Source of the DNA: Octopus sinensis
Lineage: Eukaryota
Direction: 5' to 3'
Length of the DNA: 64,000 bases
Assembly: GCF_006345805.1 (NCBI RefSeq)
Contig: NC_043001.1
Coordinates: 104,346,001-104,410,000 of the forward strand
Shown in pieces: positions 27,303 to 63,524 of the stretch (the stretch's first letter is position 1; each line of letters opens with the position of its first letter). The notes under the pieces were generated by a model that saw only the letters and a list, made by a program, of their open reading frames with translations, was not told where the DNA came from and did not search any database. Made by a program: the position numbers and the translations under genes.

Positions 27303-30300
27303 TTAGTGTATGATGTTCAACCTGAGTATCTGAAGGTAAAAAATAATTGGTGGAGAGTAACTGCTGATTTGGTCCAAATGAATGAAAGTGAGGAATTTCT
27401 CAATAAGGTCACCCAAGAACCAATCTTTTAAATATTTTGGTAGAAAACAAGAGAAATCACAGTCATGACATCTCTAGTTAGAAACACATCAGAAAGAACA
27501 TGTGACTTAGATGAAACTGCACCTTGTTACATACTGTGATGTCACAGGTAGGCTAATGATAACATTTACCTTATTTCTTAAATGAATTATAAGTCTTTAG
27601 AAAAACCTTCATAGATGACAGAATGTTGAAGGTTTTTGCAGCTTTATTTTTAACCCTTTAGCAGATTATTCAGTCAAAAGCAATGCTTAATTATCCCCGT
27701 TGTTTTGAATTAACCATGCATTATCTCATATATTTGAGACTTTCAATGGTATGACAGTACATTTTAAAAATGACATTGTAGGTTAGGTGTAAAAGGTAAG
27801 AGGTCATTGGTTTTGAACATAAGACAGGTAGGATATTTGGGTTTGATATTATAGCCAGTTTAAATGCTAAAGGGTTAAACATGTATTTGTATGAATTTTT
27901 ATGAACATTAAGGAATTAAAAGCATTAAATTTTATTACAAATGTGAGCACACACACAGTGAGGTAAGAAGTTAGTTTCCAAACCACATGCGTCTGGGCTC
28001 AGACCCAATGTGTGATGCATTCTACTATAGCCTGGGACCAACCAAAGCCTTGTTAGTCGAGTTGGCATGTGTAAACTGAAAGAAGCCCATCATATACACA
28101 TGTGTATGTGTGTGAGTTTATGTCTGTGCTTGGAAACCAGTGTTGTTGTGTTTACATCCTTGTAACTTAGCAGTTTGGCAAAACAGACCAATACAATGAG
28201 TAACAAAAAAATTACTCATTTTTTATGAATTCATTCAACTAAAAATTCTCCAGGGCAGTGTCCAGCCATTGCCACAATCTAATGAGTGAAAGAGAAGGGC
28301 GCATTGAAGGGCTCTGCCTGCATAAATGGAACAAAGGAGAGATAAAAACCTCTGGGGTTAAGATGCTTGTCTGTTTCAGTTCACATTACTACAGTATCTA
28401 TAACATTATTTCTACAGCAACACAAACAGAAGCAAATTATAGAGAAATGCTTTGCCTCACCTAAGAAAGACAAATACAGACTAAATACCTGGCTGGATTT
28501 GATCCCTTGACCCAATAATTTACTCCAATAACTATAGCATTTCTACAGGTCTATCTATCTCAGCAGTTTATAATTAAATAACACCAGATTTATTAACAAC
28601 TCAGTTACTTTCATCTCTGTAATTGTTTAGCCCCAGGCCATACCTGATCCAGGGGACCTGGGTGTGAAAGTGGATGGCTGTATTTTAAATGGGTATGGGA
28701 ATGGTTGGGTAGGGAAGATGTTCAATTTGCAACCACATGATTCCTGATTCAATCCCAATTCCCAGCACCTTGGACAAGTGTTTTCTACCATAGTAATTGT
28801 TTGACAAATTCCTTGTGAATAAAATATGGTAGATGGAAACTGTGTAGAAGACCAGCTGTTGCTTGTACATTGAAGCCTCTGTCTACAGCACAATGTTATC
28901 TAAGGAAAAGACAAAGGCCAATACAGTTCCACAGTAGTGTCACCACAAGCATGGCTGTGAGAAGGGAAAGAGCAGAATGAGATACCAAAAGGCATCCAAT
29001 CAGGACTGCTACTATTATTATCAAATTCCAAAAGTGAAAGGTAAAATTCACTGGTATTTGAACTCAGAATATAGGCAACCAAGACAAATACTGCAAAGCC
29101 TTCTACCCGATGCTGTGATCACTCTGCCAATATACTGCACAGTAAATAAATCGTAACAACTAACCTCAGGGCCTTTGAAGTATTCTTCTGCAAATTTCCT
29201 ACAAAAGAAAGAAACAAATTTTCATCACAACATCGCAATTTTCATCATTATTTCTACATCAACTCACAAAAAGAACCATTACAGAACTGTTCTAAATATA
29301 CAATACATTTGAATAGGTTTAATCTCTAATTATCACCAGGCATCATATTTGTGGATATCTGTAGAGTATGAAACTGGAATGTATTTAGTGTACTAAGATT
29401 TCTCAGTCAGCAAAAGCAGCCATGGTGAGTCGATGTCAGTTTTAGGTTTATCTTAACTGGCTTCTTAACAAGAGCATGACTCTTGCTAATAGGTAAAGCA
29501 TCTTGGTTTTCCAAAAGGAACAAATGAATAAATAATATCACAAAGTATTATAAATGCTTCAAATTTTCATTAAGCTTGAAACTCGTGTTCATTCATTCAA
29601 ATTAAGCTTCATTCAATTATTCTGGCAAAAGACTTTTGTCTTTGAATAACAAGTAATTCTTCATTATCTCCATTCTGTACTGCTCACTGGCCAATCTTTG
29701 GTCAGTTTTGGTAGCATATCAGGCATTTTAAGAAGGGGTTGCAAACCCTTTGATTTAACCCTTCCCCAATTATAGAGACAGAGACACTGTGGATGTGCCC
29801 TAAGGTATTTTACACAGCACAATGACACTAATGCAAAGAAAGTTAGAGTGTTAAGAATTTATCCCTGAATTTGATTGGTAATCTATTTATCAGACCCAGG
29901 AGGATAGAAGGTAATGTTGACTTCTGTGGGATTTGAACTCATAGCAAAGTGTGCTGGAAAGAGAAGTACAACATATTCAATCTGACACTCTCATGATCCT
30001 GTCAATTTCCACCAAACAAATACTTAGTAACTTTTTAATAGTCCACTAAGCAAACATAGCTATGTATGCTCAGAGGAATATTAAAACGGAGATCATTAGT
30101 TATTACAGGTTATTATTTTTATCATTATTCCTTAACTTTGTCCCACCTTGCTCCTCCTTGCCTGGCTGACTGACGTAGCCAACTACCTCCTCTATAGTAA
30201 GACAACTATCTCTGTCTCTCTGTCATACACTAAATTCTTGCCAGGCTCACAGCCATATCTCTCAAATCCACTCCGTCTCTCATCTAAGAGCCCATTGGCA

Positions 30301-31553
30301 ACTAACTCCACTTGTGCTGGTTCCACGTGATGGCACATGTGACACTGCCTTGTAGGAAGTTCCTATGCTACTGCCACATAAAATACGCTAAGTACACGCT
30401 CTAAAGTAGTTGGTGTTAGGAAGGGCTCCCAGCAGCAGAGACCATGCCAAAACATACACATGGAGCCTATTGTGTCCCTCCAGCTTGCCAGTTCCTATCA
30501 AACTATCCAATCCATACCATTAAATGATGATGGTTATACATGATGTTGATGATGGTGGTGGTGTTAAAGGTCTTTACTTGTAGGTAAAAAAATATTTTAC
30601 TTTTTATAATTGAATCAGGGCAAAATGAAGACAGACCAGGTTGAGATGACAATCATTTTAACTGAGAGATCTTGCAGATTTAAACAGGACTATTATATGT
30701 AATATAATCTTTACATGACTTTGTAGCGCAGAAGATTTCAAAGACATAATTTCTTATACATTATTTGTTATTTGTATTAAAATTTCAGATTTGTTTTCAA
30801 TTTCAGTTTCATAAAAATGAGACACTTTCATCAAAAAGCAATCAAGATTGGCAGATTATTTTATCCAAAGTTTGATGTCATCATCTTCAACATCGTAATC
30901 ATCATTTAATATCTGTTTTCCATGCCAGCATAGATTGGATTGTTTTCCAAGAACTGGCAAGGTGGGGAGCTGCAACAAGCTCCGGTCCTCTGCTTTGGTG
31001 AGGTTGTTATGGCTGAATGGACTTCCAACCACTTTCCAGAGTGCATTGGGTGCTTTTGAAGTGGCATCAGCAGAGATACATCTTACATGGCCCCAGGAAA
31101 GGGGAATCTTAATTTTAATCAGAGTTTAAAACGTTTTATTGTTCAATTCATTTCAATGTGAACTGGGGAAAGAAATGATCTTGAACTGAAAATTTCCCAC
31201 TTATTCTATTTCTCCCCTGTCTCTGTTCTGTGTGTGTATGAAATAGGTTTGAGCCTTTTGTCTTGCAGTTAAATACATAGAAACAAAAATGTTGCGCAAC
31301 CAGGACTTACTGAAGTTGAAATACTGAACAGAGATATTTCATGTTGTCTCATATCAACGATGTCATGGCTTCTCTTATTAATTTCTACATTTATAGTTCC
31401 TTATATCATTATCATATTTATACATCACAATCTCCTCATAATTCAAAGTCAAAATCAAACTTAAGCAGAATATTATACACTCCCTTACATTGCCTGTTCT
31501 CGTCCAAACTCTTCTGGATAACGGTTCACTTTGTTCACGAAATGTATATATCT
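27303..31553 (-). CDS. Cassette U5: X 31553-31489 + Z 29198-29165 + T 27329-27303; RYIHFVNKVNRYPEEFGREQAM|KFAEEYFKGPE|ILRLNIIH*
   Basis: catttccag|AGATAT..GCAAT|gtaagg (65 nt); ttcttttgtag|GAAATT..CCTGAG|gttagt (34 nt); ttttaccttcag|ATACTC..CACTAA. Confidence 0.7.
27654..27874. mobile_element. Short piggyBac-type MITE
   Basis: TTAA-CCCTTTAGCA ... TGCTAAAGGG-TTAA. Confidence 0.8.
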
Positions 31554-32637: not shown

Positions 32638-35600
32638 TTAAATTTGATAACAGTGTTTGTTGTTTGACTTCAATATCTGAAGGGAAAAAACAAGTGGACA
32701 GAGAGGAAACTGTTGATTTGGTCCAAATGCATGAAGGTGAGAGAATTCAAGATAAATGCACCCAAGAAGCAGATGGTGATGTTAAACTGGGTGGCATGTA
32801 AAGCCTGCAGCCAGTTTCCTGATAAAGCAAAGAGTAGTTTGATGAAAACCAAACAGCTGGTCATCTTATGTTCATATGAATGAAATTAATGACCTGTAGA
32901 TTGGAAATCATCATCATCATCATAGTTTTAATGTTCACATTTTACAGCTTTCATGGGTTTGGCAGAATTCATTCATGTAAATGTTTTTTACAGAGTGATG
33001 ACTTAATATGTTTCTTTAGTCTTTAGACTCCCATGGAAAGACATTTGGAGCTAAACCACAATAACTGTAATAGTAACAACAATAGCCACAAACATCACAG
33101 TCAATGCTGCTGCTGATGCTGCTGTTACCCTTACCTTGAGAAGTAAAACAATGCTGAATCTAAAAAGGGTTGTTAAGGGCTCTGGCTAGATGAGATAAAA
33201 TAGATGACAGATAACAAGTCTGTGGTTAGGATGCTTAACTGTTTCAACCCACATTAACAGAGGATCTACTAACTTATTTCCAACAGCTACACAAACTCAA
33301 TATGCTGCCTCATATAAAATAAATAGTGAGAACTAACCGTGCTACTTCCAAAATATTTTTCAGCTAGAGATCTGCAAAAGAAAGAAAGGAACACACATAA
33401 TGACTATCATCATCAACATCATGATCATCATCATTTTTATGTCTCTAGACAAAGAAAAACATCATAAGATTATAACTTTTTGTACAACTTCATCATGAGA
33501 CATGAATTTTCTTTTAATATTGGAACCTACATTTCGACTTCATTTCAATTACTTTCATTTCTGAACCATATTACAAGTTTTATTCCTGGCTTAATGCATG
33601 GTTCCATACCATTAATATTTCAGCAAAGACAGAAATATTGGCTTTTAAATTTGGCACAAGGCCTGCAATGTCAACTGGTACTTATTTTATCAACCCTGAA
33701 AACATGAAAGCCAAAGATGACCTTGGTGAGATATAAACTCAGAATGTGAAGATGGACAAAATACCACTAAGCACTTTGCCTGGCATAGTAACGATTCTGC
33801 CAGCTCACCACCATAGCAAACACAGAAATATTGAACTGATGTCACAACTGGCCTTACTAATTGCATTATTGGTAAGACGTATATATCCTATATATACAAA
33901 ACAAACAGCCAAAGAAACAAAGAAATACAGAAAACATGTTACTGTGGACCTGTTTAGTTCTGTAGAGTGTTAGAGTAATCAAGAATGAGGCCAGACTGGA
34001 GTTTATATTCTGGTAGTCCTTGTAGTGTGAATGGACACCATACAGATTAATGAACCAAAGCTACATAGAAATCATAAGAGGATCACACCTTCAACATGTC
34101 TGAGGTGTAGAATAACACTTGGGGCATTTGATTGCTCATTTCCATTTTGTGCAGTGTTTCACATGTCACATTGGCACAGCAATTTTTCTTCTTCTTAAAC
34201 AAATATTGTTATCAAACAACCACTACATATAATCTTGAAGCAGATGGAGTACATAAGTCTTAGTTGTAGTTGCTGATGTTTTGTCGCAAACACAGCTCTC
34301 ATCCAGCACACTTATAATCAAACATGTTGTAGCCATAATGAATTTCTCGCTTTTTTAAAAGAGGATCACACCCTCAACAGGTCTGATGTGTTGAATAACA
34401 CTTGGGGCATTTGCTTGCTCATTTTCACATGCATAACAATTTTCCTCCTTGTTAAATATTATAAATTAAACACCAAAGATAAACTTGCAGCATGTAGAGT
34501 CTATTGACTTTGGCTGTTGTTGTACATCATAACCACATATTCCCAAAGATGGTCCTTAGGATTCACTTTAGTCATATTCCTGACAATAGCATCTGAATAC
34601 ACTACCAACCTAGGCATGACTTTTGGATTGCCAAAGAAAAAAAAAAGATTAAATTTTTTTTTTTTGTCAGAACATAAAGTATTGCAATTGAGAGGTGAAA
34701 ATCATTTTCACTGACCAGCTGTGGCTATTTAATTCTGCCATGACTACAATGTCACTTGGCCTGATAGGTCTTCTTCTCAAGCACAGCATATTATCGAAAG
34801 GCTCAGTGATTTGTTATTGCCACCATGAGGCTTGATGCTCATCATCAACACCATCATCGTTGTCATTGTTTAATGTCTGCCTTCCATGCTGGCGTGGGAA
34901 AGACAGTTTGACAGGAGCTGGCCAGGCAGGTTTTTGTATTTGTCTTGGAAGGTTTTTACAGCTGGATGTCTTTCTAACACAATCCACCCAGCAGAGTAGA
35001 CATTTTTTGTAGCACTAGCAAAGGTGAGGTGAGTTTTGGTAAGGTTTTTACAGCTGTGTGCTCTTCCAGATGCCAACCACTTAACAGTGTGGATGTGGTG
35101 CTTTTTAAGTGACACATGCACCGATGGGGTCACCAAGTAACTTGCAACAAAAAATCTTTTGAGAGGGAGGGGGCATTGGAGTAGGTAGCTTCGTGTGAGA
35201 TGATAAAAGGGTATAGTGAACCAGAGGAGGGACAAGGTTAACCAGCCAAGGGAGGTAGAGAGAGAGAGATCAGGAATGAGGACAGAAACATGTGTGCTGC
35301 CATAAACGAGATACATAGTTACCCAGCTTGAGGAAAGAGTAGGAGAATGAGAGAGGGAGAGCAGGAGACAGCAGGATAGAGATGGTAGCAAAGTGCTGGG
35401 CATACTCACAAAGGATAACATTCAAAATATAAATGGGATGGTTGAGTAAAAAAGAAAAAGACAGAGATAGATGGTGGCATACCCTATGAGGTTAAATGTA
35501 AATGGCAAGACATTGCCAAAGAATACTATTCTATATTTTCAAGATGAGGAATTATGTACATTATTTACAATAGATGGATAGGTGTCATCACCTTCTTGTT

Positions 35601-38600: not shown

Positions 38601-38772
38601 GACTTTTAAGTGGCGCCTGCACCGACAGGGTCACCAAGTACTTGCAAACCAAAAAAAAAAACTTTCAAGAGGGGAAGAAGCATTGGAGGAGATGATCTTG
38701 TGTTGGATGATGAAAGGTTATAGTGAGACAGATACAGGTGTCTCATTATAGAGGAAGTACAAGGTTATGCAG

Positions 38773-38847
<75 letters not shown>

Positions 38848-41014: not shown

Positions 41015-41059
<45 letters not shown>

Positions 41060-44350: not shown

Positions 44351-46408
44351 TATATAAATACAAAATGGGACAAGAACACTGGCACAGGTATCACAACTAT
44401 AATTTCCATTTGATATTTATTTTGATGTTGATGTACTTGACTCAATAAGTCTCCTCAAGCACAGCAGGTCACCCTACGATCCAAGGTAACCACAACAGAT
44501 CGTTCTGCAATCCAAAGTACTTTGGATGGGCTGGGACTATGCGAAACTGGTGCAGGAAGCAGCCATGAACTCACACTATTTGTCAGGGTTTTGCAGTCAC
44601 AGCATATCTCCAGAGGTCTCAGTCTTTCGTCATTGCCTCTGTGAGGCCCAACATTCGAAGGTCATGCTTGACTACCTCATCACATGTCTTTCTGGGTCTA
44701 CCTCTCCCCCAGATACCTTCATCTGTTTGGGAGTGGCACTTCTTCACACATCTCTCCTCATCCATCCGCAGTACATGACCATATCAGCGCAAACATCTCT
44801 GTTGCACACCACATCTGATACTTCTTATGTCCAGCATTTCTCTCAGGGCGCTTACACTCTGTCGTGTGTGCACACTGACATTACACATCCAGTGGATCAT
44901 GTTAGCATTTCTTTCAAGCCTACACATTTCCTCTGCAGTCACATCCCATGTTTCACTACCGTGAAGCATGGCAGTTCACACACATGCATCATACAATCTA
45001 CCTTTCACTCAGAGCTAGAGACCGTTTGTCACCAGTAAGGGTAGGAGCCTTCTAAACTTTGCCCAGGCTATTCATATTCTAGTGGTGGCACCCTCTGAGC
45101 ATCCACCTCCACTACTAACTTGGTCACTTAGGTAGCGGAAACTATCAACTACTTCTAGTTTCTCCCCCTGGAGTGTGATGGAATCTGTTTTCTGAGTATC
45201 TGTGGTGTCTATTGCCCCTGTGCATCTGCCGCACATGAAAGCTATCTTCTCAGTTAATTTTCCTTTGATGTTGCTGCACCTCTTATGCATCCATAGATTA
45301 CACTGGGTACATCTTATAGAGTTTCTACCTACACCTTTTCTACAGATCGAGCAGGGCCACCTACCCGAGGGGGTGTGTGATGAGTTCGCCTTTCTGCTTA
45401 CTATAACTTTGGTCTTTGCTACACTTACTCTAAGGCCCTTTGATTCTAAGCCTAGCTTCCACACCTGAAATTTCTTTTCTAGTTCCGGTAGTGATTCTGC
45501 TATGAGGGCCAGGTCATCTGCATAAAGGAGCTCCCAGGAGCAACCTGTCTTGAATTCCTCTCTTATTGCCTGGAGGACTATGATGAATAGAAGGCGACTA
45601 AGGGCTATATATATATAATGATAAATATATATATATATATATCATCATCGTCTAATGTCCGCTTTCCATGCTAGCATGGGTTGGACGATTTTGACTAAGG
45701 GCTGGCAAACCAGATGGTTGCACCAGGCTCCAGTCTTCATTTGGCAGAGTTTCTACGGCTGGATGCCCTTCCTAACGCCAACCGCTCCGAGAGTGTAGTG
45801 GGTGCTTTTTACGTGCCACCGGCATGGAGGCCAGTCAGGTGGTACTGGCAATGACCTTGCTCAAATCCTTTTACACATGCCACCAGCACAGGTGCCAGTA
45901 AGGTGACTTTGGTAACGATTACGCTCAAATGGTACCCAGTAACTTTGGTAATGTTCACACTCGAATGGTGCCCATTTATGTGCCACTGGTACGGAAACCA
46001 GTTGGCTGCTCTGGCAATGATTACACTCGGATGATGCTCTTGGCACCCTACTAGCACAGGCACAAGTGCCAGTAAGGCGATGCTGGTAATGATCACGCTC
46101 GAATGGTGCCCTTTACGTGCCACTGGCACGGAAGCCGGTTAGCTGCTCTGTCAATGATCACGCTCGTATTTGTGCTCATTGCACTCTGCCAGCACAGACG
46201 CCAGTTATCGAATTTGATTTTGATTTTGCTTTTGATTGATTTGATTTGATATATATATGATTATATTGTGGTCACATTTATATAACACAATCTCCTCATT
46301 TCAATAAAGTAAAAACCCAATTTAAACAAAATGTAATAAAAATATTTACTTAGCTCTTTCTTTGTCAATATCTTCACTGTTCAGGTCTTTCAAGAGAGGT
46401 TTGTAATT
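32638..46408 (-). CDS. Cassette U4: X 46408-46350 + Z 33371-33338 + T 32676-32638; NYKPLLKDLNSEDIDKERAK|SLAEKYFGSST|ILKSNNKHCYQI*
   Basis: tatttatag|AATTAC..GCTAA|gtaaat (59 nt); ttcttttgcag|ATCTCT..AGCACG|gttagt (34 nt); tttcccttcag|ATATTG. The X-Z intron is expanded to about 13 kb by TE insertions. Confidence 0.62.
35950..37170 (+). mobile_element. Degraded RTE LINE
   Basis: LAFVDLEKAFDRVP, HQGSLLSPLLF and PWELLYTDD remnants plus 3'UTR and tail. Confidence 0.9.
37300..38310 (+). mobile_element. Penelope-like element remnant (RT + GIY-YIG endonuclease)
   Basis: YVDDTF, IQFTVEK, FLDVLI, then IPCSCSRVYKGKT..EEH..SGITDHVW..LKEA. Confidence 0.85.
38776..38848. repeat. (AG)n microsatellite
   Basis: Seen directly in the sequence. 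Confidence 0.95.
39824..41015 (+). mobile_element. Full-length decayed mariner transposon (~1.2 kb)
   Basis: TIRs ttgggtcatccacaaata / tatttatgggatgccccaa; ORF MEVTKEHIQHILLNEF..., VPHKL, IVTGDEKWVLY, HQDNAQPH with stop codons. Confidence 0.92.
41073..43190 (+). mobile_element. Relatively young RTE LINE, 5'-truncated with an internal deletion near 41415
   Basis: ORFs 41116..41541 and 41399..41977 (QFGFVPGKSTTDAIF, VDLEKAFDRVP, GVHQGSVLSPLLF, YADD); 3'UTR and (GAT)n tail. Confidence 0.95.
43250..44236 (-). mobile_element. CR1/L2-type LINE ORF2 C-terminal fragment (297-aa open stretch)
   Basis: FADDTK, LQSDL, KDLGVIVD, VRPHLEYCCPLWSPH, RLKALKLYSL. Confidence 0.92.
44250..45605 (-). mobile_element. 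RTE LINE 3' portion
   Basis: ORF 45072..45464 GRWPCSICRKGVGRNSIRCTQC...; contiguous 3'UTR. Confidence 0.92.
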
Positions 46409-47751: not shown

Positions 47752-50700
47752 TCAATGTATGATGTTCAACCTGATTATCTGAAGGTAAAAAATGAAACCC
47801 AAACTGTTGGTAATCTTTATCACCACATGATTGAAAATGAGGAATTGTACATTAAATGTTTCTGCCATTGATGTTGCTGCTAATACTACTATTAATACTG
47901 CTGCTGCTGTCGCCTCTGCCATCGACAACCAAAACCATTACTACCATACCACTATATTCACCCGAGGACTATTGCTTTGTCAACTGACATTGCTGCAAGT
48001 GTTACCTGTAGTTAGGTTGCAGCCCAATTTTAGACAATATGAAGAGATTACCTGCTAAATTAATCCCAACACAGACATGAATTGATATAGAGGAAGGCCA
48101 AACGCTGAATAAATAAAAAAAAAAAACACCTGCACTGGATTTGATCCTATGATGTAAGAGCATGTAATCCAATATTTTACTCTTGCAACCATAGCATTTC
48201 TGCGAGTGTATATACATTGGCAGTTTATGATTAAATAATACCAGATTTATTAACAAATCAGTTATTTTTAGCTCTGTTGTAATTGTTTAGCCCCAGGACA
48301 GTCCTCTTCCAGCAGACCTATTATCCAAAAGAGTGCTTCTAATGACAAAACCCAATAAGGACACTTATGCAGGGCCTCCATCACTGGTAGGAAAAGGGAA
48401 GGATGAAACCATCACTTGCTTGTTATCATCAGATCATATACCTCAAGTGAATGCTTACTACAGAAGGAATTCCACTGAATGCATCATTGGTACAGCTGGT
48501 GGTATAAGAATGGACAAGGGATCAAACCTAACACCAAAGAACTTGTAAAGCCCATGCAAGAGAGCTTTCAAAGAGTTTGCTGCTATCAAACTTCAAACAC
48601 CAAATTAGATTTGACCCCAGGTTAACATAGAAATAATTATCTTAGGAATTCTGTATTGAGATAGAACCTGGAAGCACATGATTGCAAAGTATACTTTTTA
48701 AATGCATATCAATGCTTGTGTCTGCTTTGTGGCTGTGAAAGTGGATGGCTGTATTTTAAATGGGTGTGGGCATGGTTGGGTAGAGAAGACATTCAATTTG
48801 AAACACATGATTCCTGATTCAATCCCAATGCACAGCACTTTCGACAAGTGTTTTCTACTCCAGTAATTGTTTGACCAATTCCTTGAGAATAAAATTTGGT
48901 AGATGGAAACTGTGTAGAAGACCAGCTGTTGCTTGTACATTGAAGCCTCTGTCTACAGCACAATGTTATCTAAGGAAAAGACAAAGGCCAATACAGCTTC
49001 ACAGCAGTGTCATCACAAGCATGGCTGTGAGAAGGGAAAGAGCAGGATGAGATACCACAAGGCATCCAGTCAGGTGTTTTAACAATCCTGGACTGCTACT
49101 ATTATTATTAAATTCAAAAAGTGAAAGGTAAAATTAACTTCACTGTTATTTGAACTCAGAATTTAGACAACCAAGACAAATACTGCAAAGCCTTCTATCC
49201 GATGCTTGAATCTCTCTGCCAATATACTGCACAGTAAATAAATCGTATCAACTAACCTCATACTCTTTAAAGTGTTGCTCTACCAGCTCCCTGCAAAAGA
49301 AACAAACAAATTTTCATCACATCATCACAATCATCATTATTATTTCTACACCAGCTCACAAAAAGAACCATTACAGAATTGTTATTTTGTGTTTGTAAAT
49401 TTTATTATTTTAATCTAAATCTACAATACATTTGAATAAGTCTAATCTCTATCAGGCATCATATTTGTGGATGTCTGTAGCATATCAAACTGGAATGTAT
49501 TTGAATTATAAGTCTTCCTTCATCGATTATTAATCTTTAGAGAATGTTGAAGGTTTTTGCAGTTTTTCTTCTAAATATATTTGAACAAGTTTTTATGGAC
49601 ATTTATATGTGAATAGTATCAATTTTTCTATGGCTGAATGCCCTTCCTAACATCAATCACTCCAACAGTGTAGTGGGTGCTTTTGCATACCACTGGCATG
49701 GGTGCCATTGATATGACACCAGCATCAGCCATGTCTATGATCTCACTTGGCTTGACAGGTCTTCACAAGCACAGTATATCACCAAAGGTCTTGCTCACTT
49801 GTCACTGCCTCCATGAAGTCCAATGCTTGAACAGTGTCTTTAACATGCCACTGGTATGAGTGCCAGTTCGATGGCACTGGCATTGGTCACAACTATGATC
49901 TCATTAGGCTTGTCAGATCTACTCAAGCACAGCATATTGCCAAAGGTCTCGGTTACTTATCATTGCCTCCATGAGGCACAACTTTTAAAGATCATGCGTG
50001 ATCATCTCGGCCCATATCTTCCTGGGTCTGTTTCTTCCACAGGTTTCCTCCACCATTAGAGGACAGCACTTCTGTCCTTGTCCATGAGCATCGTATCACC
50101 ATACCAATGCAGTCAACTCTCTTACACACCATATCTGATACCTCTTATACCTAAATTTTCTCTCAGGGTGATTACACTGTTGTGCATGCACACTGATATT
50201 ACACATCTAGTGGGGCCTACGAGATTCATTTCTTACAAACCTATGCATGTCCTTGGCAGTCACTGTTTCACTGCCATGTAGCATGGCACTTTGCACCTAG
50301 GCACCATACAATCTTCCACAGCAGAGGTAGGAGCTCTTTGAACTTTGCTCAGCCTATTCTTCTAGCAGCTATGCTCTTGGGGCATCTGACTTGGCCACCT
50401 ACCTTCCACACACAAAAGCTATTTTTCCTGTTAACCTTCCTCTGATATTGCTGCATATCTTATGTGTCTATAGCTTACACTGGGTACATATTATGAAGTT
50501 TCTACCTACACCATTTCTACGGATCAAGCAGGGCCATCTACCTAAAGGTGTGTGTGATTTGTCTGCCTTCCTACTTACTAAGACTTTGGCTTTTGGTAGG
50601 TTAACTCTAAGGCCCTTCGATTCCATTGCTGCACATCTTATGTGTCTATAGCTTACACTGGGTACATCTTATGGAGTTTCTACCTACACCTGTTCTACAG

Positions 50701-51684
50701 ATCAAGCAGGGCCATCTACCTAAAGGGATGTGTAATTTGTCTGTCTTCTTACTTACTAAGGCTTTGGTTTTTGGTAGGTTAACTCTAAGGCCCTTCGATT
50801 CTAGAACTTGCTTCCACACCTGAAACTTCTCTAGTTCTGGAAGTGATTCAGCTTTAAGAAGAAGGTCATCAGCATAGAGGAGCCCCCAGGGACAGCCTCT
50901 CTTGAATTTCTCAGTTATTGCCTGGAGGACTATGATGAACAAGAGGGGACTGTGGCGTCATCCTTGGTGAACCCCTACGCCTACCTGGAGTTCTTTGCTA
51001 TACTTGATGCCAACCCTCAACTTACTGACCACATCCCTGTACTTGGCTTGTACAGCTATCACCAACCACTAGTCGATCCCTAGTTTCTGAATAGACCATC
51101 AGATAAGGTATTGAAGAACCATGTCAAAGGCTTTTTCCAAGTCAACAAAAGTCAAGTACAAAGGTTTATCTTTGGCTAGGTATTTCTCATGCAGCTGTTT
51201 TACCAGAAATATAGCCTCAGTGATGTTTCTTCCAGCACAAAACCAAATTGCATTTCATCCAGACTAACTCTCTCGCTAATTAGTTGGGCTATGATCCAAG
51301 AATCTTAAACCTCTGTAATTATTTCTAAAGTATCACCTTTACCTTTGTAGCAGTTGACTATGGTGCTGCTACACCAGTCACTGGGTATGACTCTTTTGTG
51401 TACCACCTGGTTAAAACATACAAACAAAATTAGTATATTCAAAGTTGCATAACCAGGACTTACTGAAGTTGAAACATATATATTTAATGTTGTCTCATAT
51501 CAACAATGTCATGGCTTCTCTTACTATCCTGACATCATCATCATATTTATATACATCATAGTTTCTCTATAATTGAAGGTAAAAATTAAATTTAAGCAGA
51601 ATCTTATAAAATTACTTACAGGGCTCTTTTCCTTTTTATAGAGTATGGATGGCTGTCCATTTCCTTTTTGAAATTTTCATATGA
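47752..51684 (-). CDS. Cassette U3: X 51684-51620 + Z 49290-49257 + T 47778-47752; SYENFKKEMDSHPYSIKRKRAL|ELVEQHFKEYE|IIRLNIIH*
   Basis: cttttttag|TCATAT..GCCCT|gtaagt (65 nt); ttcttttgcag|GGAGCT..TATGAG|gttagt (34 nt); ttttaccttcag|ATAATC..CATTGA. Confidence 0.7.
49630..51400 (-). mobile_element. Degraded RTE LINE with an internal ~180-bp tandem duplication (50450-50810)
   Basis: PWGLLYADD and GRWPCLIC motifs; the cttacactgggtacat block is repeated. Confidence 0.88.
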
Positions 51685-52689: not shown

Positions 52690-55600
52690 TTAAACACGTT
52701 TGTTAGAAGGGGCAGGTAAGTTTCCATGATATTTTGGTAGCCCTGTCTCAGACTTGTAAGGATTTCCATGTATGTTGTTCAACCTCAACATCTGAAGGAA
52801 AAAACAAATGGATGGAGAGGGAACTGCTGATTTCGTCCAAATGCATGAAGGTGAGAGAATTCATACTAAAAGCACCCAAGAAGCAGATGGTGGTGTTAAA
52901 GTGAGTGGTATGTAAGACCTGTATCCAGTTTTCTGATAAAACAAAGGACTTTGATCAAAACAAAACAGCTGGTCATCTTATGTCCATATGAAGGAAAATA
53001 ACGACCTATAGATTGGAAATCATCATCATCATCATAGTTTTAATATACACATTTCATAGCTTACATGGATCTGGCAAAATTCATTCATATAGTATTTTTA
53101 CAGTGTAAGGATTTAATGTGTGTCCTTGGTCTTTAGACTCTCATGGAAAGACAACTGGAGCTAAACAACAATAACTGTAATAGCCACAAAAGTCACAATC
53201 AATGCTGTTGCTGCTACTGGTGGTTGTGCTGCTGCTGCTACCCCTACTACTTTAAAAAAGGAATACCACCAGCATTTCACCTTCAAAAGCAAAATAATGC
53301 TAAATCTGAAAACAACTTTTAAGGTCTCTGGTTTGTGATATAACAGATGAGAGATAACAAGTCTGTGGTTAGGATGCTTGTCTCTTTCAATTCAACATTA
53401 ACAGAGGATCTTCTAACTTATTTCCAAGACCTACACAAACTCAATATGCTGCCTCGTACAAAATAAATAAGAACTAACCTTGTTACTTCCAAAATGTTTT
53501 TTCGCTAATTTCCTGTGAAAGAAATAAAGGAACACACATTATCATGACTATTGTGATCATCATCACAATCTTTACATCTTCAGACAAAGACAAAAAACCT
53601 ACGATTATAACATTTTGTGCAATTAATTCTATCTTTAGACATGAATTCTTTGAACCTAGATTTGAACTTCATTTCAATTACTTTAATCTCAGAACCTCAT
53701 TAGGAGTTTTATTCTTGGCTATTAATATTTATCTCTCAGCAAAGACTGAAATACTGGTTTCAAAGGCCTGCAATTTCGGGGGAGGGGTAAGTCAATTACA
53801 TCAACATGTAACCACAGGCAAGTGTCTTCTGCTATAGCTTTGGGAAACTGAAAGAAGCCTGCCACACACACGTGTGTGTATGTGTGTGTGTGTGCATCTT
53901 TGTTTGTCCTGAACCATTGCATGACAACCAGTGTTGGTGTGTTTATGCTCCCATAATCTAGCAGTCCACCAAAAATGATCAACAGAATAAGTACCAATCT
54001 TAAAAACAATAGGTACAGGGGTTGAGTCATTCCATTAAAAATTCTGAAAGGTGGTACCCCAGCATGATCAACTGGTACTTATTTTATCGACCTTGAATGG
54101 ATGAAAGGCAGTTAACCTTGGCAGAATTTCTACTCAGGAAGTGAAGATGGACAAAATACCACTAAGCACTTTGCCTGGCATAGTAACAATTCTGCCAGCT
54201 CACCACCATAGCAAACACAGAAATATTGAACTGATGTCACTACTGGCCTTACTAATTGCATTATTGGTAAGACGTATATGTCCTGATTCTTTGATTCTCA
54301 TGAGTTTTCCACTTTGGAATTACAGAATCTTCATTCTATAGCATTATATTAATTCATTTCTCACTCCATATGTATTAAAATGTTTATTCTGTCATTAAGG
54401 CTTTTCTTCCATCCCAACCTTTAGAACCTCGCAGTGTTTCATATACAAGGCCCTCCATAAATGCATGGCATGTTATAAATGCAGTTTTAATGTTCCAAAT
54501 GAAACAATGCAGATGGAGATGCATAAAAAACCATTTTCATCTCAAAAGATGAAGTTAATAATCTGAAAAATATATAATCACATCTGCAATAAATCATCTC
54601 AAACATTTACATATTTAAGAAACATTATTCTCAAATTCAAAATACAGCCTTTCTCATTTACAAAACAAACAGCCAAAGAAACAAAGAAATACAGAAAACA
54701 TGTTACTGTGGACCTGTTTAGTTCTGTAGAGTGTTAGAGTAATGAAGAATGAGGGCAGACTGGAGTTTATATTCTAGTGGTCCTTGTGGTGTAAATGGAC
54801 ACCATACAGATTAATGAACCAAAGCTACATAGAAATCATAAAAGAGGATCACACCCTCAACAGGTCTGAGGTGTAGAATAACACTTGGGGCATTTGCTTG
54901 CTCATTTTCATATGCATAACAATTTGTCTCCTCATAAAATATTATCAATTAAGCACCAAAGATAACCTTTGCAGCATGTAGAGTCCACTGACTTTGGTTG
55001 TTGTTGTACATCATAACAACGTATTCCCAAAGATGATCATGTCTCTGAAGACTGGTCCTTAGGATTCACTTTAACCATGAACAATTCAAAATGATGTGAA
55101 TAAAGAAGCTTTACATTTGCCAGAGTAATCTCATTGCTAAACAGTTAATCATTGTATATTTTTGTAGTATTATCATATTTAATGATGCATATTTTTATGT
55201 CCTTTTAGACTGTATTATTTTCAAAATACAACTCATAAGAATTTAACGATATAATTTCTCATAAATTATTTTACACACATTTGTATTAAGCTTAATATCT
55301 TAAATTTCAAACTGAGAAAGCTAAGATATATCCAGGAAATACAGGAAAACATTGATTGAATCCATCAAACGATTGAGTTTGAATTTCAAATGTAGCTTAA
55401 AATAGTATTTGTTTGTTCTTCTGCTCTCAACACTTCTTGATGATAGCAATCTGTGAAAATATCTCAATTTTAAATTTTAAACTGAAAAAAGGGAGAAATA
55501 AATTCATTCATTCACCTAGCCGTCATATCCACCCACTATTTGCTGTCAGGTTAGAGTATCGCATCTATAGGGTCTAATCAGAAGTGACCATCACTAGACT

Positions 55601-58081
55601 GCCTGACTGGATTTCCAAGAATGACCAACTGAGACAATATTTTGCTCCACCAATTGGCTTGGCTTGAAGAGTCCATCTAGTGATTCTTTCATGCAACATT
55701 CTAATCCGGTACCAGAGATGAAACTCTTCAATGGGCAGAAGTAGAAGTTTGCCCTGGAGAGACTCCCTAGCCTCCAAGCTATGCATCTTGTCAAGTAACA
55801 TTACTCTAGAGACCTTTTGGTACACTGTGGCATGAAAAGTTGCAGCAGAGGCAGTAAAAAAACTCCAAGACTAAGTCATATAAGAACTCTGGGTTTAAGC
55901 TGGACTCTGATATTAGGTTGATCAATAAAGTACAAGGTGGTATCAAAAAGTTTCCAGACTAGTTCTGTAGCATGCCAACAGATAGTAGTAGAAAGCTGCA
56001 CGTGCAGTGAGAGCTAGCAGTGACCTTTATGAGTTAGTGTGCAGATTGACATCTCGATGTTTACTTTGTAAATTGTGGAATTTGTGTTTTTGTGATCATA
56101 TGTATATTGTATATTTTTGTCAATGGATAGGAAGTTGGAACAAAGAGCCAATGTTTAGAGACAAAGAGCCAATGTTTAGATACCTATATCTTTACATTGG
56201 TTTTAAATTTTGGCACAAGACCAAGAGAGCTAAGTCAATTACAATAACCCCAGTGGTCAAATGCTATTTATTCTCTCAACCCCAAAAGGTGAAAAGCAGA
56301 GAATTTGAACCCAGAATGTAAAGAAGCACGACATGCCACTAAGCATTATGCTAAAGACTCTGCCAGCTTGCCACCTTATATATGTATCTCTATATTGTTA
56401 TATTTATGCATCACTATTAGACTGGATGAAAAATGCAACTTTTGAAATTGGTAACCAAGAATCGATATTTTGTTGCGAATTTGTGTTTAAAGAAAGGTGT
56501 ATGAAAATGCTTGTGATTAAATATTTTTTTCAGGCTTTGAAACGCAATTGAAAATTTTAAAAATCGCCATTTTTGGTTGAAGTTTGGATCTCATGGATTA
56601 TAAGTTGTAAGGAATACATATTTCTACATAGCAGAATGCAAAACAGTAAATATAGTATTTTTAAGAGGTTGCATACCAAGTTTCAATACAATTGACTAAT
56701 ATCTTGAGGTTTCACATTGACTGTAAAGAGAACAAGAGAGTGAATTTCTCTCCAGTGCCACTGCAACAGTTATTGTGTGTGGACATACGTCGTACATGTG
56801 TGAAGTTTTCTGCTTTGTACCTTGACTTTAGGCCATTGTATTAAAATTAATGATCATTTTAAATATAGTGTTGATTACATTTAGTGATGACTCATAAGCC
56901 AATAATACATCATGATACTGACTGCCCAATATTTGGTATTCTATGTGATTTAAAGAGCAAGTTTTGCCAACTTACAAGGATGAACTAAAATGTGCTTTAT
57001 TTGAATGAGAAAAAGAAAAGAACGTAGTTAACAGAGATCTTTCAATTAAATAAATTGTCAAAATTGTAGCAGAAAAGATAATTCTTCTTTAGCAAAAGGC
57101 ATCCAATATTTGTGTTATGACTGAGTCAGTTAAACTTGAAAATCTTGATCTTAAAGTACCATGCATTACTAAAATTTGTGAAAAATAGAAAAAATGTGCC
57201 ATCATTTCAAACAAAGTGTAATGTGTTTATAAACAATGCAACAAAAGATTTGACATTTCCTGTTTCAAGTGCAACGCCTTTAAAAACTGTAGTTGTAGTA
57301 GAGCCAAGTACAGGATCAATGAACAAATTGAAAAATGATCATTGGTGGAATAGATCAAGCAGTATCTAAACAGTACATGCAGAGCCTAATTAGAAAGAAT
57401 CAGCCAGATCACAGTCGCCTTTCTGTGTCAGCAAAGGAAAGTTTCAGATTTTCAGCTTAACTCGCTCAATCATAACACAAGGGATGGATGCATTTTGCCT
57501 AAGAAAAATTATCTTTTCTGCTACAATCTTGACAATTTATTTAATTTATTTTAATGAGTGTGTAATCTAGACCTCATGTAACAGATATATTTAGTGAACT
57601 AGTTTAAAAAATGATAAAGAAAACAAAGTCGAGAAGTCTATTTATTTCACACAATTTTGAAATTTCAAGTACATGGTGGAGCCTAAAGATATAAATATTA
57701 GAGCTTGAGATTTTAACACTCTGGTTTTTAAAGGATTTCGCAAAAGAAAATCGATTTGTAACAAGGAATTTAGAATGGCAAATGAGTTATAAATTGATAT
57801 TTTGTTCATTATTCAAAATTTCAAATGGGCTGCGGAGCCTCAAGATGTAAATTTAATAACTTCAACTTTTAACTTTTTAAAGGAGTTTGCAATAAAAGAT
57901 ATATTCTTGAAAAGATATTTTGAAAATCTGTGTAAAAAGTACCTTTTTGCTCCACTCTAATTGCTATGTCTTTATTTCAATAAAGTAAAAATTGAACAAA
58001 ATGTAATAAAAATATTTACTTAGCTCTTTCTCTTTCAATATATGGAAAACGGCACAGTTCAGTCCAAAAATTTCCTAAGCC
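52690..58081 (-). CDS. Cassette U2: X 58081-58020 + Z 53512-53479 + T 52791-52690; GLGNFWTELCRFPYIERERAK|KLAKKHFGSNK|MLRLNNIHGNPYKSETGLPKYHGNLPAPSNKRV*
   Basis: tatttgcag|GGCTTA..GCTAA|gtaaat (62 nt); ctttcacag|GAAATT..AACAAG|gttagt (34 nt); ttttccttcag|ATGTTG. Phases are compatible. Confidence 0.7.
55935..56130 (+). mobile_element. Left-end fragment of a second mariner family
   Basis: TIR caaggtggtatcaaaaagtttccagactagtt, matching the right TIR at 63210-63241. Confidence 0.7.
56900..57546. mobile_element. Unclassified DNA-transposon-like remnant with 61-bp inverted repeats (57044-57104 / 57486-57546)
   Basis: Inverted repeat seen directly; transposase-like residues VLPTYKDELKC and FDISCFKC. 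Confidence 0.4.
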
Positions 58082-61565: not shown

Positions 61566-63524
61566 CTGCATGCATTTAAAATTTTTTCCTGATACATTCC
61601 TGCAAAAGAAATAAACACACATCTTCATTTCACCATCATCACTATCATCAAAAAGAACGGCTATGGTTTCATATATGTATAAAAAAACATTATTTACATC
61701 AGACGGGTATTTGTTTTCATCTTGTTTGTTGTTAACACAATGTTTTGGTTGATATACCCTCAAGCCTTCATCAAGTGTCTTGCAGAAATATCAAACCTGG
61801 GTTCTCATTCCTAATGTATTTTTTGATGTTATTATTATTATTCAGGTCACTGCCTGGGATTGAACTTGGAATCTTGGGGTTAGTAGCCCGCGCTCTTAAC
61901 CACTACACCATATGCCAGTGGGCATATCCGTCATATGTAAATAATGTACATAATTTCTCTTTTCTTAATAAAACTGTATAAAAAAAGTTTCCATGTGTCT
62001 TAAACAAGCCATGTTGATGGTACTTGCAAACCTGCAGACACTATAGAGAACTAGTAATGCTCCTTGGTAAAAATGCTATGTCAAAGATTACTGGTACTTT
62101 TCAAATATCACTGGGCTAAAAGTTCTCAAGAACAGAGCACTTAATTTGTTGCCATTGGTATCCAGAGATTCCTTGAAGAATGTCATCAATTTACCCTGCT
62201 ACTAGTTCGTTAGTTCTCTATAAATTACCAATGTAAAAATTCCACCAGTTGCATTATTCAACAGGTGGGTAGCTGTGAGCATTTGACAACATTCCTGATG
62301 CCAGGCACTAACTACTGGATGCAGTTTAAAATCATACGCAGAATTTTTAGTTAGATATGAGATTGTATCAAAATATTCATGGACTAGTTCTGCAGTATGC
62401 CAACAGATGGCAACACATGACTGCATGCACAGTGACAGCCAGCAATGACTTTTATGAGGCAGTGTGCCAAGTGACATTGCTGTGTTTTCCTCACAAGTTG
62501 TGAAAATTGTGTTTTTGTGATCATGCGTATGTTGTAGTCTGCAATTTTTGTCAGGGACAGGAAGTTGGCACAAAGAGCTAATGTGAAATTTTGTGTTGAA
62601 CTTGGGAAGTCTGCTACAGAGACTTACAGTGATGGCAAGCTTACAGTGATGGTGAAACAGGCCATGCGCAATGTTTCAAGTGGCACAAGCACTTCTGAAG
62701 GGATGACAGAGCTACATCTCAATCAAGAGCATGTTCATCATTTTGTTGATATATATGGTATTGTGCATTGAGAATTTGTCCACCAGGGCTGGACCATTGA
62801 GAGTTCTACTGCAACATTTTGAAGCATTTGAGGGAGAACACTTCACACAAGAAACTGGATCAGTAGAGCGTTAAGAATTGGATCCTTCACGACGACAATG
62901 CACCCTGTCACTGAGCTCTCCTCACTCGTGTGTGTCCCACCAAAAATTGCTTCTACACCTGCCCCATTGACCAGATTTAGCACCTATGGACTTTATCTCT
63001 TCCCCAAGATGAAAATGCAGGTCAAAGGTCACCGTTTTTGAGATCAAGAGCGAGTTGCAGAAGGTCCTCAAGTTGTTAATGGAAAACGACTTCCAGACTG
63101 GATTCCAAAAGTGGTAGGAATGCTGGGATCAGTGTACTGCAGTGCAAGTTGACTATTTTGAAGAAGGTGATGTTAAAACTTTGGTAAATAAGTTATATTT
63201 TATTAAACATAACTAGTCTGGGAACTCTTTGACACCACCTTGAAAATAGAAATATAATGGTGTAATAAGCTAAAGTAGGACTTACTGAAGTGGAAATACT
63301 GAATATACAATTCATTATCTCTTACATCAACCTTGCTAGGGATTCTCTTGCTATTTTCTGCTTATACATCCTTATATCATTATCATTTATACATCAATGT
63401 CTTCTCATTTAATTAAGAATAAAAATGAAATTTAAAAAAGAAGTTATGAAATTATTTACTTAGCTTCTCTTTTGAGAATACCGTTTGGAAGGTTACGTAT
63501 CTCCTCTGCAAAGTCTCTATATTC
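61566..63524 (-). CDS. Cassette U1 of tandem exon array: exon X 63524-63460 + exon Z 61599-61566; EYRDFAEEIRNLPNGILKREAK|NVSGKNFKCMQ (no T exon found)
   Basis: ttttctag|GAATAT...GCTAA|gtaaat (65 nt, phase 0>2); ttcttttgcag|GAATGT...ATGCAG|gttagt (34 nt, phase 2>0). Open frame across the junction, homologous to the other cassettes. Confidence 0.65.
61830..61920 (-). mobile_element. Short tRNA-derived SINE with (TAA)n tail
   Basis: Reverse strand: ggcatatggtgtagtggttaagagcgcgggctactaaccccaagattccaagttcaatccc...aataataataa. Confidence 0.7.
62358..63241 (+). mobile_element. Internally deleted mariner (second family)
   Basis: QRANVKFCVELGKSATET, WILHDDNAPCH and DLAPMDF..FPKMK remnants; TIRs at both ends. 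Confidence 0.85.

What the first reader, a model, noticed from the sequence alone, without database searches (positions are those of the whole stretch)
27303..63524. Architecture puzzle: alternative 3'-terminal cassettes versus one protein of 33-aa (99-nt) repeats
Seen: only 1.1-1.9 kb of mostly TE and intron sequence separates one T exon from the next X exon, with no obvious promoter or start exon, so the units do not look like free-standing genes. Model A: shared upstream exon(s) splice to any one X-Z-T cassette, giving variable C-termini (a reversed protocadherin-like layout). Supporting this, T at 27303 and 47752 both read I[LI]RLNIIH* with the stop at the same position but TAA vs TGA. Model B: T is skipped and Z (ends phase 0) joins the next X (starts phase 0); 65+34 = 99 nt gives an in-frame helical repeat protein whose repeat number could vary by splicing. 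Both models fit the phases.
Basis: inference. Interest (0 to 1): 0.72.

Follow-up and report, generated by a model that had tools for sequence, protein, structure and literature searches.

The report
Octopus giant 33-residue repeat gene
The repeated small exons are the last six and two-thirds repeats of one very large, uncharacterised octopus gene that public annotations already join into a single 33-residue helical-repeat protein. The supposed terminal "T" exons look like unused intron sequence, so the puzzle is largely ordinary, apart from exons that change faster than their introns.

Summary
The X (65/62/59 nt) and Z (34 nt) exons are real, lie on the minus strand at the stated places and have the stated phases. 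Joined X-Z-X-Z with every T skipped, the 13 X/Z exons in the window give an open frame. That frame is 100% identical to residues 1228-1444 of Octopus sinensis XP_036358878.1 (LOC115212235, 1935 aa, "uncharacterized"). Four further exons below the array (12.9 kb, 11.3 kb, 4.4 kb, 0.8 kb) encode the protein's non-repeat C-terminal part. The array is therefore internal, not a set of 3' ends.

T elements follow only 4 of the 6 Z exons. They have no conserved poly(A) signal or donor. They diverge between species at the neutral rate, and one orthologous pair differs by a frame-breaking 13-nt indel. The shared I[LI]RLNIIH-stop comes from a recent two-cassette duplication.

The protein has four UBA-like domains, about 32 repeats with no Pfam, PDB-sequence or Foldseek match, and an Ala/Glu/Lys-rich tail. 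It was found only in Octopus.

One feature is unusual: the repeat exons diverge about twice as fast as the surrounding introns, between both paralogues and orthologues. No transcript data could be examined, so occasional use of T or cassette skipping is not excluded.

The parts
63460..63524 (-). X63 exon, 65 nt, phase 0->2 (EYRDFAEEIRNLPNGILKREAK)
   Evidence: equals P0003 residues 1228-1249
61566..61599 (-). Z61 exon, 34 nt, phase 2->0 (NVSGKNFKCMQ)
58020..58081 (-). X58 exon, 62 nt (GLGNFWTELCRFPYIERERAK)
53479..53512 (-). Z53 exon, 34 nt (KLAKKHFGSNK)
52690..52791 (-). T52 element: strong acceptor-like site followed by a 33-codon open frame. Not in any annotated mRNA.
   Evidence: It differs from its O. 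bimaculoides orthologue by a 13-nt indel.
51620..51684 (-). X51 exon, 65 nt (SYENFKKEMDSHPYSIKRKRAL)
49257..49290 (-). Z49 exon, 34 nt (ELVEQHFKEYE)
47752..47778 (-). T47 element (IIRLNIIH-TGA). Not in any annotated mRNA.
46350..46408 (-). X46 exon, 59 nt (NYKPLLKDLNSEDIDKERAK)
33338..33371 (-). Z33 exon, 34 nt (SLAEKYFGSST). It is reached from X46 across a 13-kb intron filled with transposable elements.
32638..32676 (-). T32 element (ILKSNNKHCYQI*). Not in any annotated mRNA.
31489..31553 (-). X31 exon, 65 nt (RYIHFVNKVNRYPEEFGREQAM)
29165..29198 (-). Z29 exon, 34 nt (KFAEEYFKGPE)
27303..27329 (-). T27 element (ILRLNIIH-TAA). Not in any annotated mRNA.
25328..25392 (-).
17794..17827 (-).
15440..15504 (-). 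X15 exon, 65 nt (EYKQFVRDIEKLPSIIERQKFE). This is the last repeat exon and it splices directly to C1.
12764..12869 (-). C1, the first non-repeat C-terminal exon (KLNISQLIRCLGIWTGLDYGRLIYVYRSEENKLLW)
11254..11297 (-). C2 exon (PTMKKLAVISSKHKE)
4399..4444 (-). C3 exon (FKLDNYFLQIDLLIK)
768..880 (-). C4 exon (EIENIVANIPRYATKKHDVTRLKGKNNVTNDITEGTNE). The gene continues past the start of the window.

Best explanation
The window is an internal stretch near the 3' end of one very large gene (about 310 kb) on the minus strand: Octopus sinensis LOC115212235.

Each 33-residue repeat of its protein is split over a 65-nt X exon (phase 0 to 2) and a 34-nt Z exon (phase 2 to 0). Every X-Z pair is therefore a frame-neutral module. 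The array grew by tandem duplication of such modules, most recently of a two-cassette block. Blocks X58..T47 and X46..T27 are copies, and the second was later inflated by transposable elements.

The mRNA joins X-Z-X-Z in genomic order through all seven X and six Z exons in the window. It then continues into four non-repeat exons (C1-C4) and beyond the window.

The T elements are pieces of the Z-to-X intron that were copied along with some cassettes. They begin with a good acceptor-like site but have no partner donor or poly(A) signal. The splicing machinery most likely ignores them, and their short 'reading frames' are accidents. This last point is inferred.

The product has four N-terminal UBA-like domains, about 32 two-helix repeats of an undescribed type, a conserved C-terminal region and an Ala/Glu/Lys-rich tail. 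Its cellular role is unknown. The most likely role is an elongated helical scaffold whose repeat surfaces change quickly (inferred).
For: Identity with an annotated protein:
- The spliced X/Z frame is open over 13 exons and 216 codons.
- It is 100% identical to XP_036358878.1 residues 1228-1444, and C1-C4 continue to residue 1547. All 17 exons have AG/GT borders.
- Every X and Z copy that nhmmer finds in the window is used, in order.

Orthologues built the same way:
- O. vulgaris, 2076 aa.
- O. bimaculoides XP_014787007.2: all 13 mapped exons alternate X and Z and none is a T.
- The older 495-aa O. bimaculoides model also runs from the repeats into the C-terminal exons.
- The O. bimaculoides locus is collinear with the window at 84-94% identity.

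Evidence about T:
- There are only 4 copies in the window, and 5 in the O. bimaculoides locus.
- T is absent after Z61 and Z17 in the window, and after four Z exons in the O. bimaculoides locus.
- No poly(A) hexamer is conserved downstream, and T32 has none before the next X.
- Orthologous T identity is 451/491 (91.9%), against 91.6% for 15 kb of intron.
- T52 and its orthologue differ by a 13-nt indel after codon 4.
- The sequence upstream of T is conserved as nucleotides but not in a common frame (read directly).

Other points:
- No X exon begins with ATG.
- The annotated gene range is 310 kb.
- UBA_4 and UBA_8 score above the Pfam cut-offs in the N-terminus.
Against: No transcript data could be examined, so all support for the Z-to-X junctions comes from gene models. 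Those models may share evidence, and the O. vulgaris annotation may have used O. sinensis proteins.

The CCTTCAG acceptor with its pyrimidine tract is invariant in all nine T copies of the two species. It looks stronger than the mostly TAG acceptors of the X exons it would compete with. Some use of T is therefore conceivable.

The current O. bimaculoides model is a fragment. It starts at an internal ATG and ends by reading into an intron. This shows that annotation of this locus is not robust.
Confidence: 0.88

Rival explanations
1. Model A: upstream exons splice to one X-Z-T cassette, and T supplies the stop and the 3' end. This would give a family of proteins with alternative C-termini, a lola / mod(mdg4)-like or 'reversed protocadherin' layout.
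For: T has an invariant, pyrimidine-rich CCTTCAG acceptor. Z ends in phase 0 and T reads to a stop within 8-33 codons. The T27/T47-type stop is kept in four copies across two species.
Against: T is missing from 2 of 6 Z-to-X introns here and from 4 in O. bimaculoides. No poly(A) signal is conserved and T32 has none. T evolves at the neutral rate. The T52 frame is broken between species. Non-repeat coding exons of the same protein lie downstream of the array. Three species' gene models all skip T. A search with Z+T junction peptides found no such protein, though this is a weak negative.
Confidence: 0.04
2. Model B with regulated variation: the main product is the full repeat protein, but because every X-Z pair is frame-neutral, cassettes are skipped in some tissues so that repeat number varies. 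In addition or instead, T is used now and then as a premature-termination exon that lowers output.
For: The phase symmetry of X-Z pairs allows any subset to be joined in frame. O. vulgaris and O. sinensis models differ by four repeats, which could be copy-number difference or skipped exons. T acceptors are strong and conserved.
Against: All X and Z exons in the window are included in the one O. sinensis isoform on record, and its 90% cluster has a single member. T shows no constraint beyond neutral. There is no transcript evidence either way.
Confidence: 0.2
3. A tandem family of small free-standing genes, each X-Z-T unit having its own promoter.
For: Units recur with short spacers. The old O. 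bimaculoides model placed a Met-containing 'first exon' inside the array.
Against: No X exon begins with ATG, and the frame is open across units. The putative first exons of the old model are repeated intronic elements. One copy in the window carries two stop codons, and the newer models dropped them.
Confidence: 0.02

Closest known systems
Exon-duplicated repeat arrays in giant structural genes (titin PEVK exons, nebulin module and super-repeat exons); from general knowledge
   Same: Tandem duplication of frame-neutral exon units, each encoding one short repeat. There is a higher-order duplication unit: here a two-cassette block, in nebulin a seven-module super-repeat. Introns are long and rich in transposable elements. 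There is scope for repeat-number variation by exon skipping.
   Different: Here each repeat is split over two exons (65 + 34 nt). There is no sequence relationship to titin or nebulin. Alternative splicing has not been shown. The protein carries UBA-like domains rather than sarcomeric domains.
Alternative 3'-cassette loci (Drosophila lola, mod(mdg4)); mirror image of clustered protocadherins / UGT1A; from general knowledge
   Same: Superficially, repeated cassettes each end with something that reads to a stop codon.
   Different: Constant exons lie downstream of the array. T is absent from some cassettes, lacks a poly(A) signal and is unconstrained. Annotated mRNAs string all cassettes together.
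33-34-residue two-helix repeats (ankyrin, TPR)
   Same: Repeat length of 31-33 residues, and two helices per repeat in the AlphaFold model.
   Different: No Pfam hit at E<=10. No PDB sequence hit. No Foldseek hit better than E=0.45, TM<0.4.
EF-hand pairs
   Same: The weak top Foldseek hits are EF-hand proteins (calaxin, CDPK calmodulin-like domain, S100, NCS-1). The model shows short bridges between the loops of neighbouring repeats, and the array has a two-repeat periodicity.
   Different: Foldseek probabilities are <=0.13. hhalign against calmodulin gives a probability of 0.3%. There is no Pfam EF-hand hit, and the loops lack the canonical calcium-ligand pattern. This is a lead only.
UBA-like domain proteins (Pfam UBA_4 / UBA_8; p47/UBX-type adaptors)
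   Same: The N-terminal 380 residues of the protein (outside the window) score above the gathering thresholds for UBA_4 and UBA_8.
   Different: No UBX domain was found.

Membership tests
Single gene with tandemly duplicated, frame-neutral repeat exons | Consecutive repeat exons join in one open frame with compatible phases and canonical splice sites | tested here: met
   The frame is open over 13 exons and 216 codons. All X exons run phase 0->2 and all Z exons 2->0, with AG/GT at every border.
Single gene with tandemly duplicated, frame-neutral repeat exons | The joined exons correspond to a recorded mRNA or protein | tested here: met
   100% identity to XP_036358878.1 residues 1228-1547. The O. 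vulgaris and O. bimaculoides models have the same chain. These are gene models; the transcripts themselves were not seen.
Single gene with tandemly duplicated, frame-neutral repeat exons | Non-repeat exons of the same protein flank the array | tested here: met
   C1-C4 lie downstream in the window. The N-terminal UBA-like region lies upstream, outside the window.
Alternative 3'-terminal cassette array (lola / mod(mdg4)-like) | Every cassette carries its own terminal exon | tested here: not met
   There are 4 T copies for 6 complete cassettes, and none after Z61 or Z17. T is also absent after four Z exons in O. bimaculoides.
Alternative 3'-terminal cassette array (lola / mod(mdg4)-like) | The terminal exon is followed by a conserved polyadenylation signal | tested here: not met
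   No shared AATAAA/ATTAAA position. T32 has none before the next X. Density is not above the background of 1.4 per kb.
Alternative 3'-terminal cassette array (lola / mod(mdg4)-like) | The terminal exon is under selective constraint | tested here: not met
   Orthologous identity is 91.9% against 91.6% for introns. T52 has a 13-nt frame-breaking indel.
Alternative 3'-terminal cassette array (lola / mod(mdg4)-like) | Transcripts end in the cassettes | not testable with these tools
   No RNA data were available. The protein search with Z+T junction peptides found nothing, but that search is insensitive.
Tandem family of independent small genes | Each unit has a start codon or first exon | tested here: not met
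   0 of 7 X exons start with ATG. The 'first exons' of the old O. bimaculoides model are repeated intronic elements, and one copy here has two stops.
Mutually exclusive exon cluster (Dscam-like) | Only one cassette of the cluster is included per mRNA | tested here: not met
   The annotated proteins of three species include all cassettes in series. Real isoform diversity was not testable.
TPR / ankyrin repeat families | Match to the family profile or fold | tested here: not met
   No Pfam hit. PDB profile search found nothing significant. Best Foldseek result was E=0.45.
EF-hand | Profile match or calcium-binding loop pattern | tested here: not met
   No Pfam hit. hhalign against calmodulin gave a probability of 0.3%. 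Only insignificant Foldseek hits.
UBA-like domain proteins (Pfam UBA_4, UBA_8) | Score above the Pfam gathering threshold | tested here: met
   On the N-terminal 381 residues, UBA_4 scores 43.2 bits (cut-off 21.8) and UBA_8 scores 38.4 bits (cut-off 26). This region lies outside the window.

The most novel reading that the evidence does not exclude
The repeat exons may be kept diverse by selection, since they diverge about twice as fast as their own introns. Because every X-Z pair is frame-neutral, octopus tissues may also splice different subsets of the ~32 cassettes, possibly with T as a regulated stop exon. The result would be a family of variable-length, variable-surface scaffolds made from one gene. 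That would be a lineage-specific diversification system built on an undescribed helical repeat.
Probability: 0.12. Interest if true: 0.6.

Novelty: new member of a known kind. Interest (0 to 1): 0.3.

Why it matters
The architecture puzzle itself is settled by public gene models, so that part is ordinary.

Three things remain of modest interest.
- This is a 310-kb, Octopus-restricted gene. Its roughly 32 repeats have no Pfam family, no PDB relative and no mention in the searched literature.
- It gives a clean example of array growth by duplication of two-exon, frame-neutral modules.
- Its coding exons are the least conserved part of each cassette. This points to diversifying selection or to exon-scale sequence exchange, in a gene that carries ubiquitin-associated-like domains.

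If the fast change reflects selection on a binding surface, the gene would be a candidate for rapidly evolving recognition functions in cephalopods.

Tried and rejected
- Pfam on the concatenated repeats, on P0002 and on P0003: nothing for the repeats or the C-terminal region.
- AlphaFold on P0001 as a single sequence: pLDDT 45, unusable. It improved to 83.8 only with an alignment of paralogous four-repeat segments.
- Foldseek against the PDB: no significant match.
- PDB sequence searches with the C-terminal region and with the repeat profile: nothing.
- EF-hand idea: hhalign against calmodulin negative.
- SEP-domain idea for the C-terminus, recalled by eye: not confirmed.
- A Z-like terminal exon at about 12959 after X15: rejected, because P0003 shows that X15 splices to C1 at 12869.
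- T as an 8-nt micro-exon or recursive splice site: rejected by reading. Eight nt breaks the frame, and Z-end plus T-start does not rebuild a GT donor.
- T derived from the C1 exon: the T profile does not hit the C1 region.
- Z+T junction peptide search: only P0001 was returned. The same tool had failed to return P0003 and P0012 for an identical query, so this negative is weak.
- Literature searches on the locus and accession identifiers and on octopus hypervariable tandem exons: nothing relevant.
Full report
**What is in the sequence**

The features lie on the minus strand of an AT-rich animal sequence (35-45% GC) full of transposable elements.

- X is preceded by a pyrimidine-poor tract ending in TAG or CAG and followed by GTAAGT or GTAAAT.
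- Z is always 34 nt, preceded by TTTCTTTTGCAG-like tracts and followed by an unusual but invariant GTTAGT donor.
- T begins after an invariant CCTTCAG.

Profile searches with the flanks included find seven X copies, six Z copies and four T copies in the window, with E-values of 1e-38 or lower. Coordinates are in the parts list.

X starts in phase 0 and ends in phase 2. Z completes the codon and ends in phase 0. One X plus one Z therefore gives 31-33 codons.

- the 65 + 34 = 99 nt sum;
- the T-to-next-X spacers of 1.1-1.9 kb;
- the two I[LI]RLNIIH stops, TAA and TGA.

- T32 and T52 read quite differently (ILKSNNKHCYQI*, and a 33-codon frame).
- Two of the six Z-to-X introns have no T at all.
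- The array continues below 27303 with X25, Z17 and X15.

**How the array is built**

Self-comparison shows that [X58-Z53-T52-X51-Z49-T47] and [X46-Z33-T32-X31-Z29-T27] are tandem copies of a two-cassette block, at an offset of about 20 kb. The second copy is stretched by about 9 kb of inserted repeats between X46 and Z33, including a reverse-transcriptase fragment.

T27 and T47 are therefore paralogues from that duplication. They are about 83% identical over the 216-nt BLAST segment that contains T and 76% over the whole 260-nt T element. That alone explains a stop codon at the same position.

**What gene it is**

Joining X and Z exons in genomic order and skipping every T gives an uninterrupted frame of 216 codons.

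A word-indexed search with that product returned only an O. bimaculoides protein, XP_014787007.2 (207 aa, 72% identity). Its locus is collinear with the window at 84-94% nucleotide identity. All 13 of its exons alternate X and Z, with no T.

A profile of the 33-residue unit was run against 1.84 billion representative proteins. It found one strong hit with 24 matched stretches, E = 9e-150. This is XP_036358878.1, "uncharacterized protein LOC115212235" of Octopus sinensis, 1935 aa.

Exact peptide mapping places residues 1228-1547 of that protein on 17 minus-strand exons of the window, all with AG/GT borders. These are the 13 X/Z exons at 100% identity, followed by four non-repeat exons at 12764-12869, 11254-11297, 4399-4444 and 768-880. 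The window is therefore O. sinensis, and the annotated gene spans about 310 kb.

The O. vulgaris orthologue (2076 aa, "hypothetical predicted protein") has the same chain, with six substitutions in the window's part and four extra repeats further upstream. An older 495-aa O. bimaculoides model also runs from the repeats into the C-terminal exons.

Every X and Z copy detectable in the window is used by the O. sinensis model, in order.

Because non-repeat coding exons of the same protein lie downstream of the array, the cassettes cannot be the gene's set of 3' ends.

**What the T elements are**

I looked for anything that would make T a working exon.
- *Poly(A) signals.* There is no shared position. 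T32 has none before the next X, and the density is not above the window's background.
- *Donor sites.* None is conserved downstream (alignment, read directly). An 8-nt exon ending at the AG|GT that follows would break the frame.
- *Constraint.* The two orthologous T pairs are 451/491 identical (91.9%), against 91.6% for 15 kb of orthologous intron.
- *Reading frame.* T52 and its O. bimaculoides orthologue differ by a 13-nt indel after the fourth codon, which gives unrelated "peptides".
- *Upstream sequence.* The 95 nt upstream of T is conserved among copies as nucleotides, but in different frames.
- *Distribution.* In O. bimaculoides T is absent after four Z exons, including the orthologue of Z61.

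The one point in T's favour is that its CCTTCAG acceptor with a long pyrimidine tract is invariant in all nine copies. It looks better than the X acceptors. With so few independent lineages I cannot call this significant.

My reading is that T is intron sequence that travelled with some duplications. It is an acceptor-like decoy without an exon-definition partner. This is inference, because I had no transcript data.

A search with Z+T junction peptides found no protein. That tool also missed the window's own protein earlier, so the negative counts for little.

**The protein**

Repeats occupy residues 383-1444 of XP_036358878.1, which is about 32 units with the consensus xYxxFxxxIxxxPxxIxxExAKKLAEKYFxxxx.

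The N-terminal 380 residues hold UBA-like domains above the Pfam thresholds (UBA_4, UBA_8). After the repeats comes a conserved segment, then a long Ala/Glu/Lys-rich tail.

The repeats have no Pfam match and no PDB sequence match.

AlphaFold failed on a single sequence (pLDDT 45). With an alignment of twelve paralogous and orthologous four-repeat segments it gave pLDDT 83.8. The model has two helices per repeat and short bridges between the loops of neighbouring repeats.

Foldseek against the PDB found nothing significant. The weak top hits are EF-hand proteins, but hhalign against calmodulin is negative. I record that only as a lead.

Apart from octopus proteins, the profile search returned only leucine-rich-repeat and similar noise. 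The family appears restricted to Octopus, or changes too fast to follow. No paper mentions these loci.

**An unexpected feature: exons change faster than introns**

*Among cassettes in the window:*

| Copies | Upstream 100 nt | Exon | Downstream 100 nt |
|---|---|---|---|
| Seven X | 66.5% | 50.3% | 68.7% |
| Six Z | 66.0% | 54.9% | 67.5% |

These are mean pairwise identities. Length changes in the exons are in frame.

For the recent pair X31/X51 the exon is 60% identical, against 84% for the flanks.

The intron flanks of X46 and X58 are 87% identical, yet by hand count only 13 of 31 residues of repeats r46 and r58 are shared (read directly). At the protein level X46 instead resembles a repeat about 500 residues upstream in the protein (read directly). 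This hints at exon-scale exchange, or at homogenised introns around selected exons.

*Between O. sinensis and O. bimaculoides orthologues:*
- Seven exons show 55 differences in 353 nt (15.6%).
- Flanks show 8.1% and 15 kb of intron shows 8.4% (Fisher p = 4e-5).
- Nei-Gojobori estimates on 117 codons give dN = 0.154 (bootstrap 0.10-0.21) and dS = 0.28, against an intron distance of 0.086.
- dN/dS is 0.55 because dS is also raised, so I do not claim classical dN/dS > 1.

*Between O. sinensis and O. vulgaris:* the repeats differ at 28/1062 residues, against 3/588 in the non-repeat N- and C-terminal parts (p = 0.002).

*Caveat.* Against O. bimaculoides, the C1-C4 exons also differ at 27% of residues. 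Fast change is therefore not confined to the repeats.

Possible causes are diversifying selection, exchange among cassettes or relaxed constraint. The data here do not separate them.

**Verdict**

- The gene model is already public in three species, so the architecture is not new.
- The repeat family is undescribed, and its fast-evolving exons are a modest curiosity.
- The remaining uncertainty is whether T or cassette skipping is ever used. This needs transcript data that I could not reach.

Noticed in passing
It has three more repeat exons (X25, Z17, X15) and four non-repeat C-terminal exons (C1-C4). The coding sequence runs off both ends of the window.
   Followed up: yes
all X and Z exons, e.g. 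31489-31553 vs 51620-51684 and 46350-46408 vs 58020-58081: The coding exons are the least conserved part of each cassette. Identity is about 50-55% in the exons against 66-69% in the flanking 100 nt. Between species the exons diverge about twice as fast as introns, and dS is raised as well.
   Followed up: partly
window 29629-29673, 47136-47207, 58803-58868 (minus strand): Copies of the two 'first exons' of the old O. bimaculoides model (MEIRKNRLLFNDKSL..., CNEYFATSFNEVEDYCLILNLTF) sit inside introns of the array. The 58.8-kb copy has two stop codons. They look like ab initio padding of that model rather than real exons.
   Followed up: partly
donors of Z exons at 61565, 53478, 49256, 33337, 29164, 17793 (minus strand): All six Z exons here, and all six in the O. 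bimaculoides model, use GTTAGT donors (T at +3). This is an uncommon donor type kept through every duplication. Most X acceptors are TAG rather than CAG.
   Followed up: no
window ~12930-12959, minus strand: A Z-like open frame (IVEEYFITC*) lies in the X15-to-C1 intron, about 60 nt upstream of the C1 acceptor. It is possibly the decayed Z exon of the last cassette. C1, like a Z exon, starts in phase 2 with Lys-Leu.
   Followed up: partly
window ~34500-46250: The 13-kb X46-to-Z33 intron is inflated by nested repeats, including a reverse-transcriptase fragment (41399-41977, plus strand, RVT_1 E=1.5e-28). Copies of the same elements occur at 8-11 kb, 23-25 kb and 50-51 kb.
   Followed up: partly
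about 60 nt upstream of T acceptors, e.g. window ~27385-27397, ~32732-32744 and ~52845-52857, minus strand: A 13-nt palindrome, ATTTGGACCAAAT, is conserved in most T-type elements of both species. T52 has one mismatch. Its meaning is unknown and it may be chance.
   Followed up: no
P0012 (O. vulgaris) vs P0003 (O. sinensis), outside the window: The O. vulgaris protein has four extra 33-residue repeats after the repeat ending DIDKDRAK. This is either a copy-number difference between very close species or exons skipped in the O. sinensis model.
   Followed up: no
L001 (O. bimaculoides CM046605.1) 10001-37645: The current RefSeq model XP_014787007.2 is a fragment. It starts at an ATG inside an X exon and ends by reading AAG|TAA into the intron after an X exon. 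The locus has many N gaps. A neighbouring model, LOC106881215 (129/134 aa), is another piece of the same kind of array.
   Followed up: partly
AlphaFold model of P0003 residues 1228-1356 (window exons X63-Z33): The model is confident (pLDDT 84) only when paralogous repeat blocks are used as the alignment. Short bridges link the loops of adjacent repeats, and the weak top Foldseek hits are EF-hand proteins. No sequence evidence supports that resemblance.
   Followed up: partly
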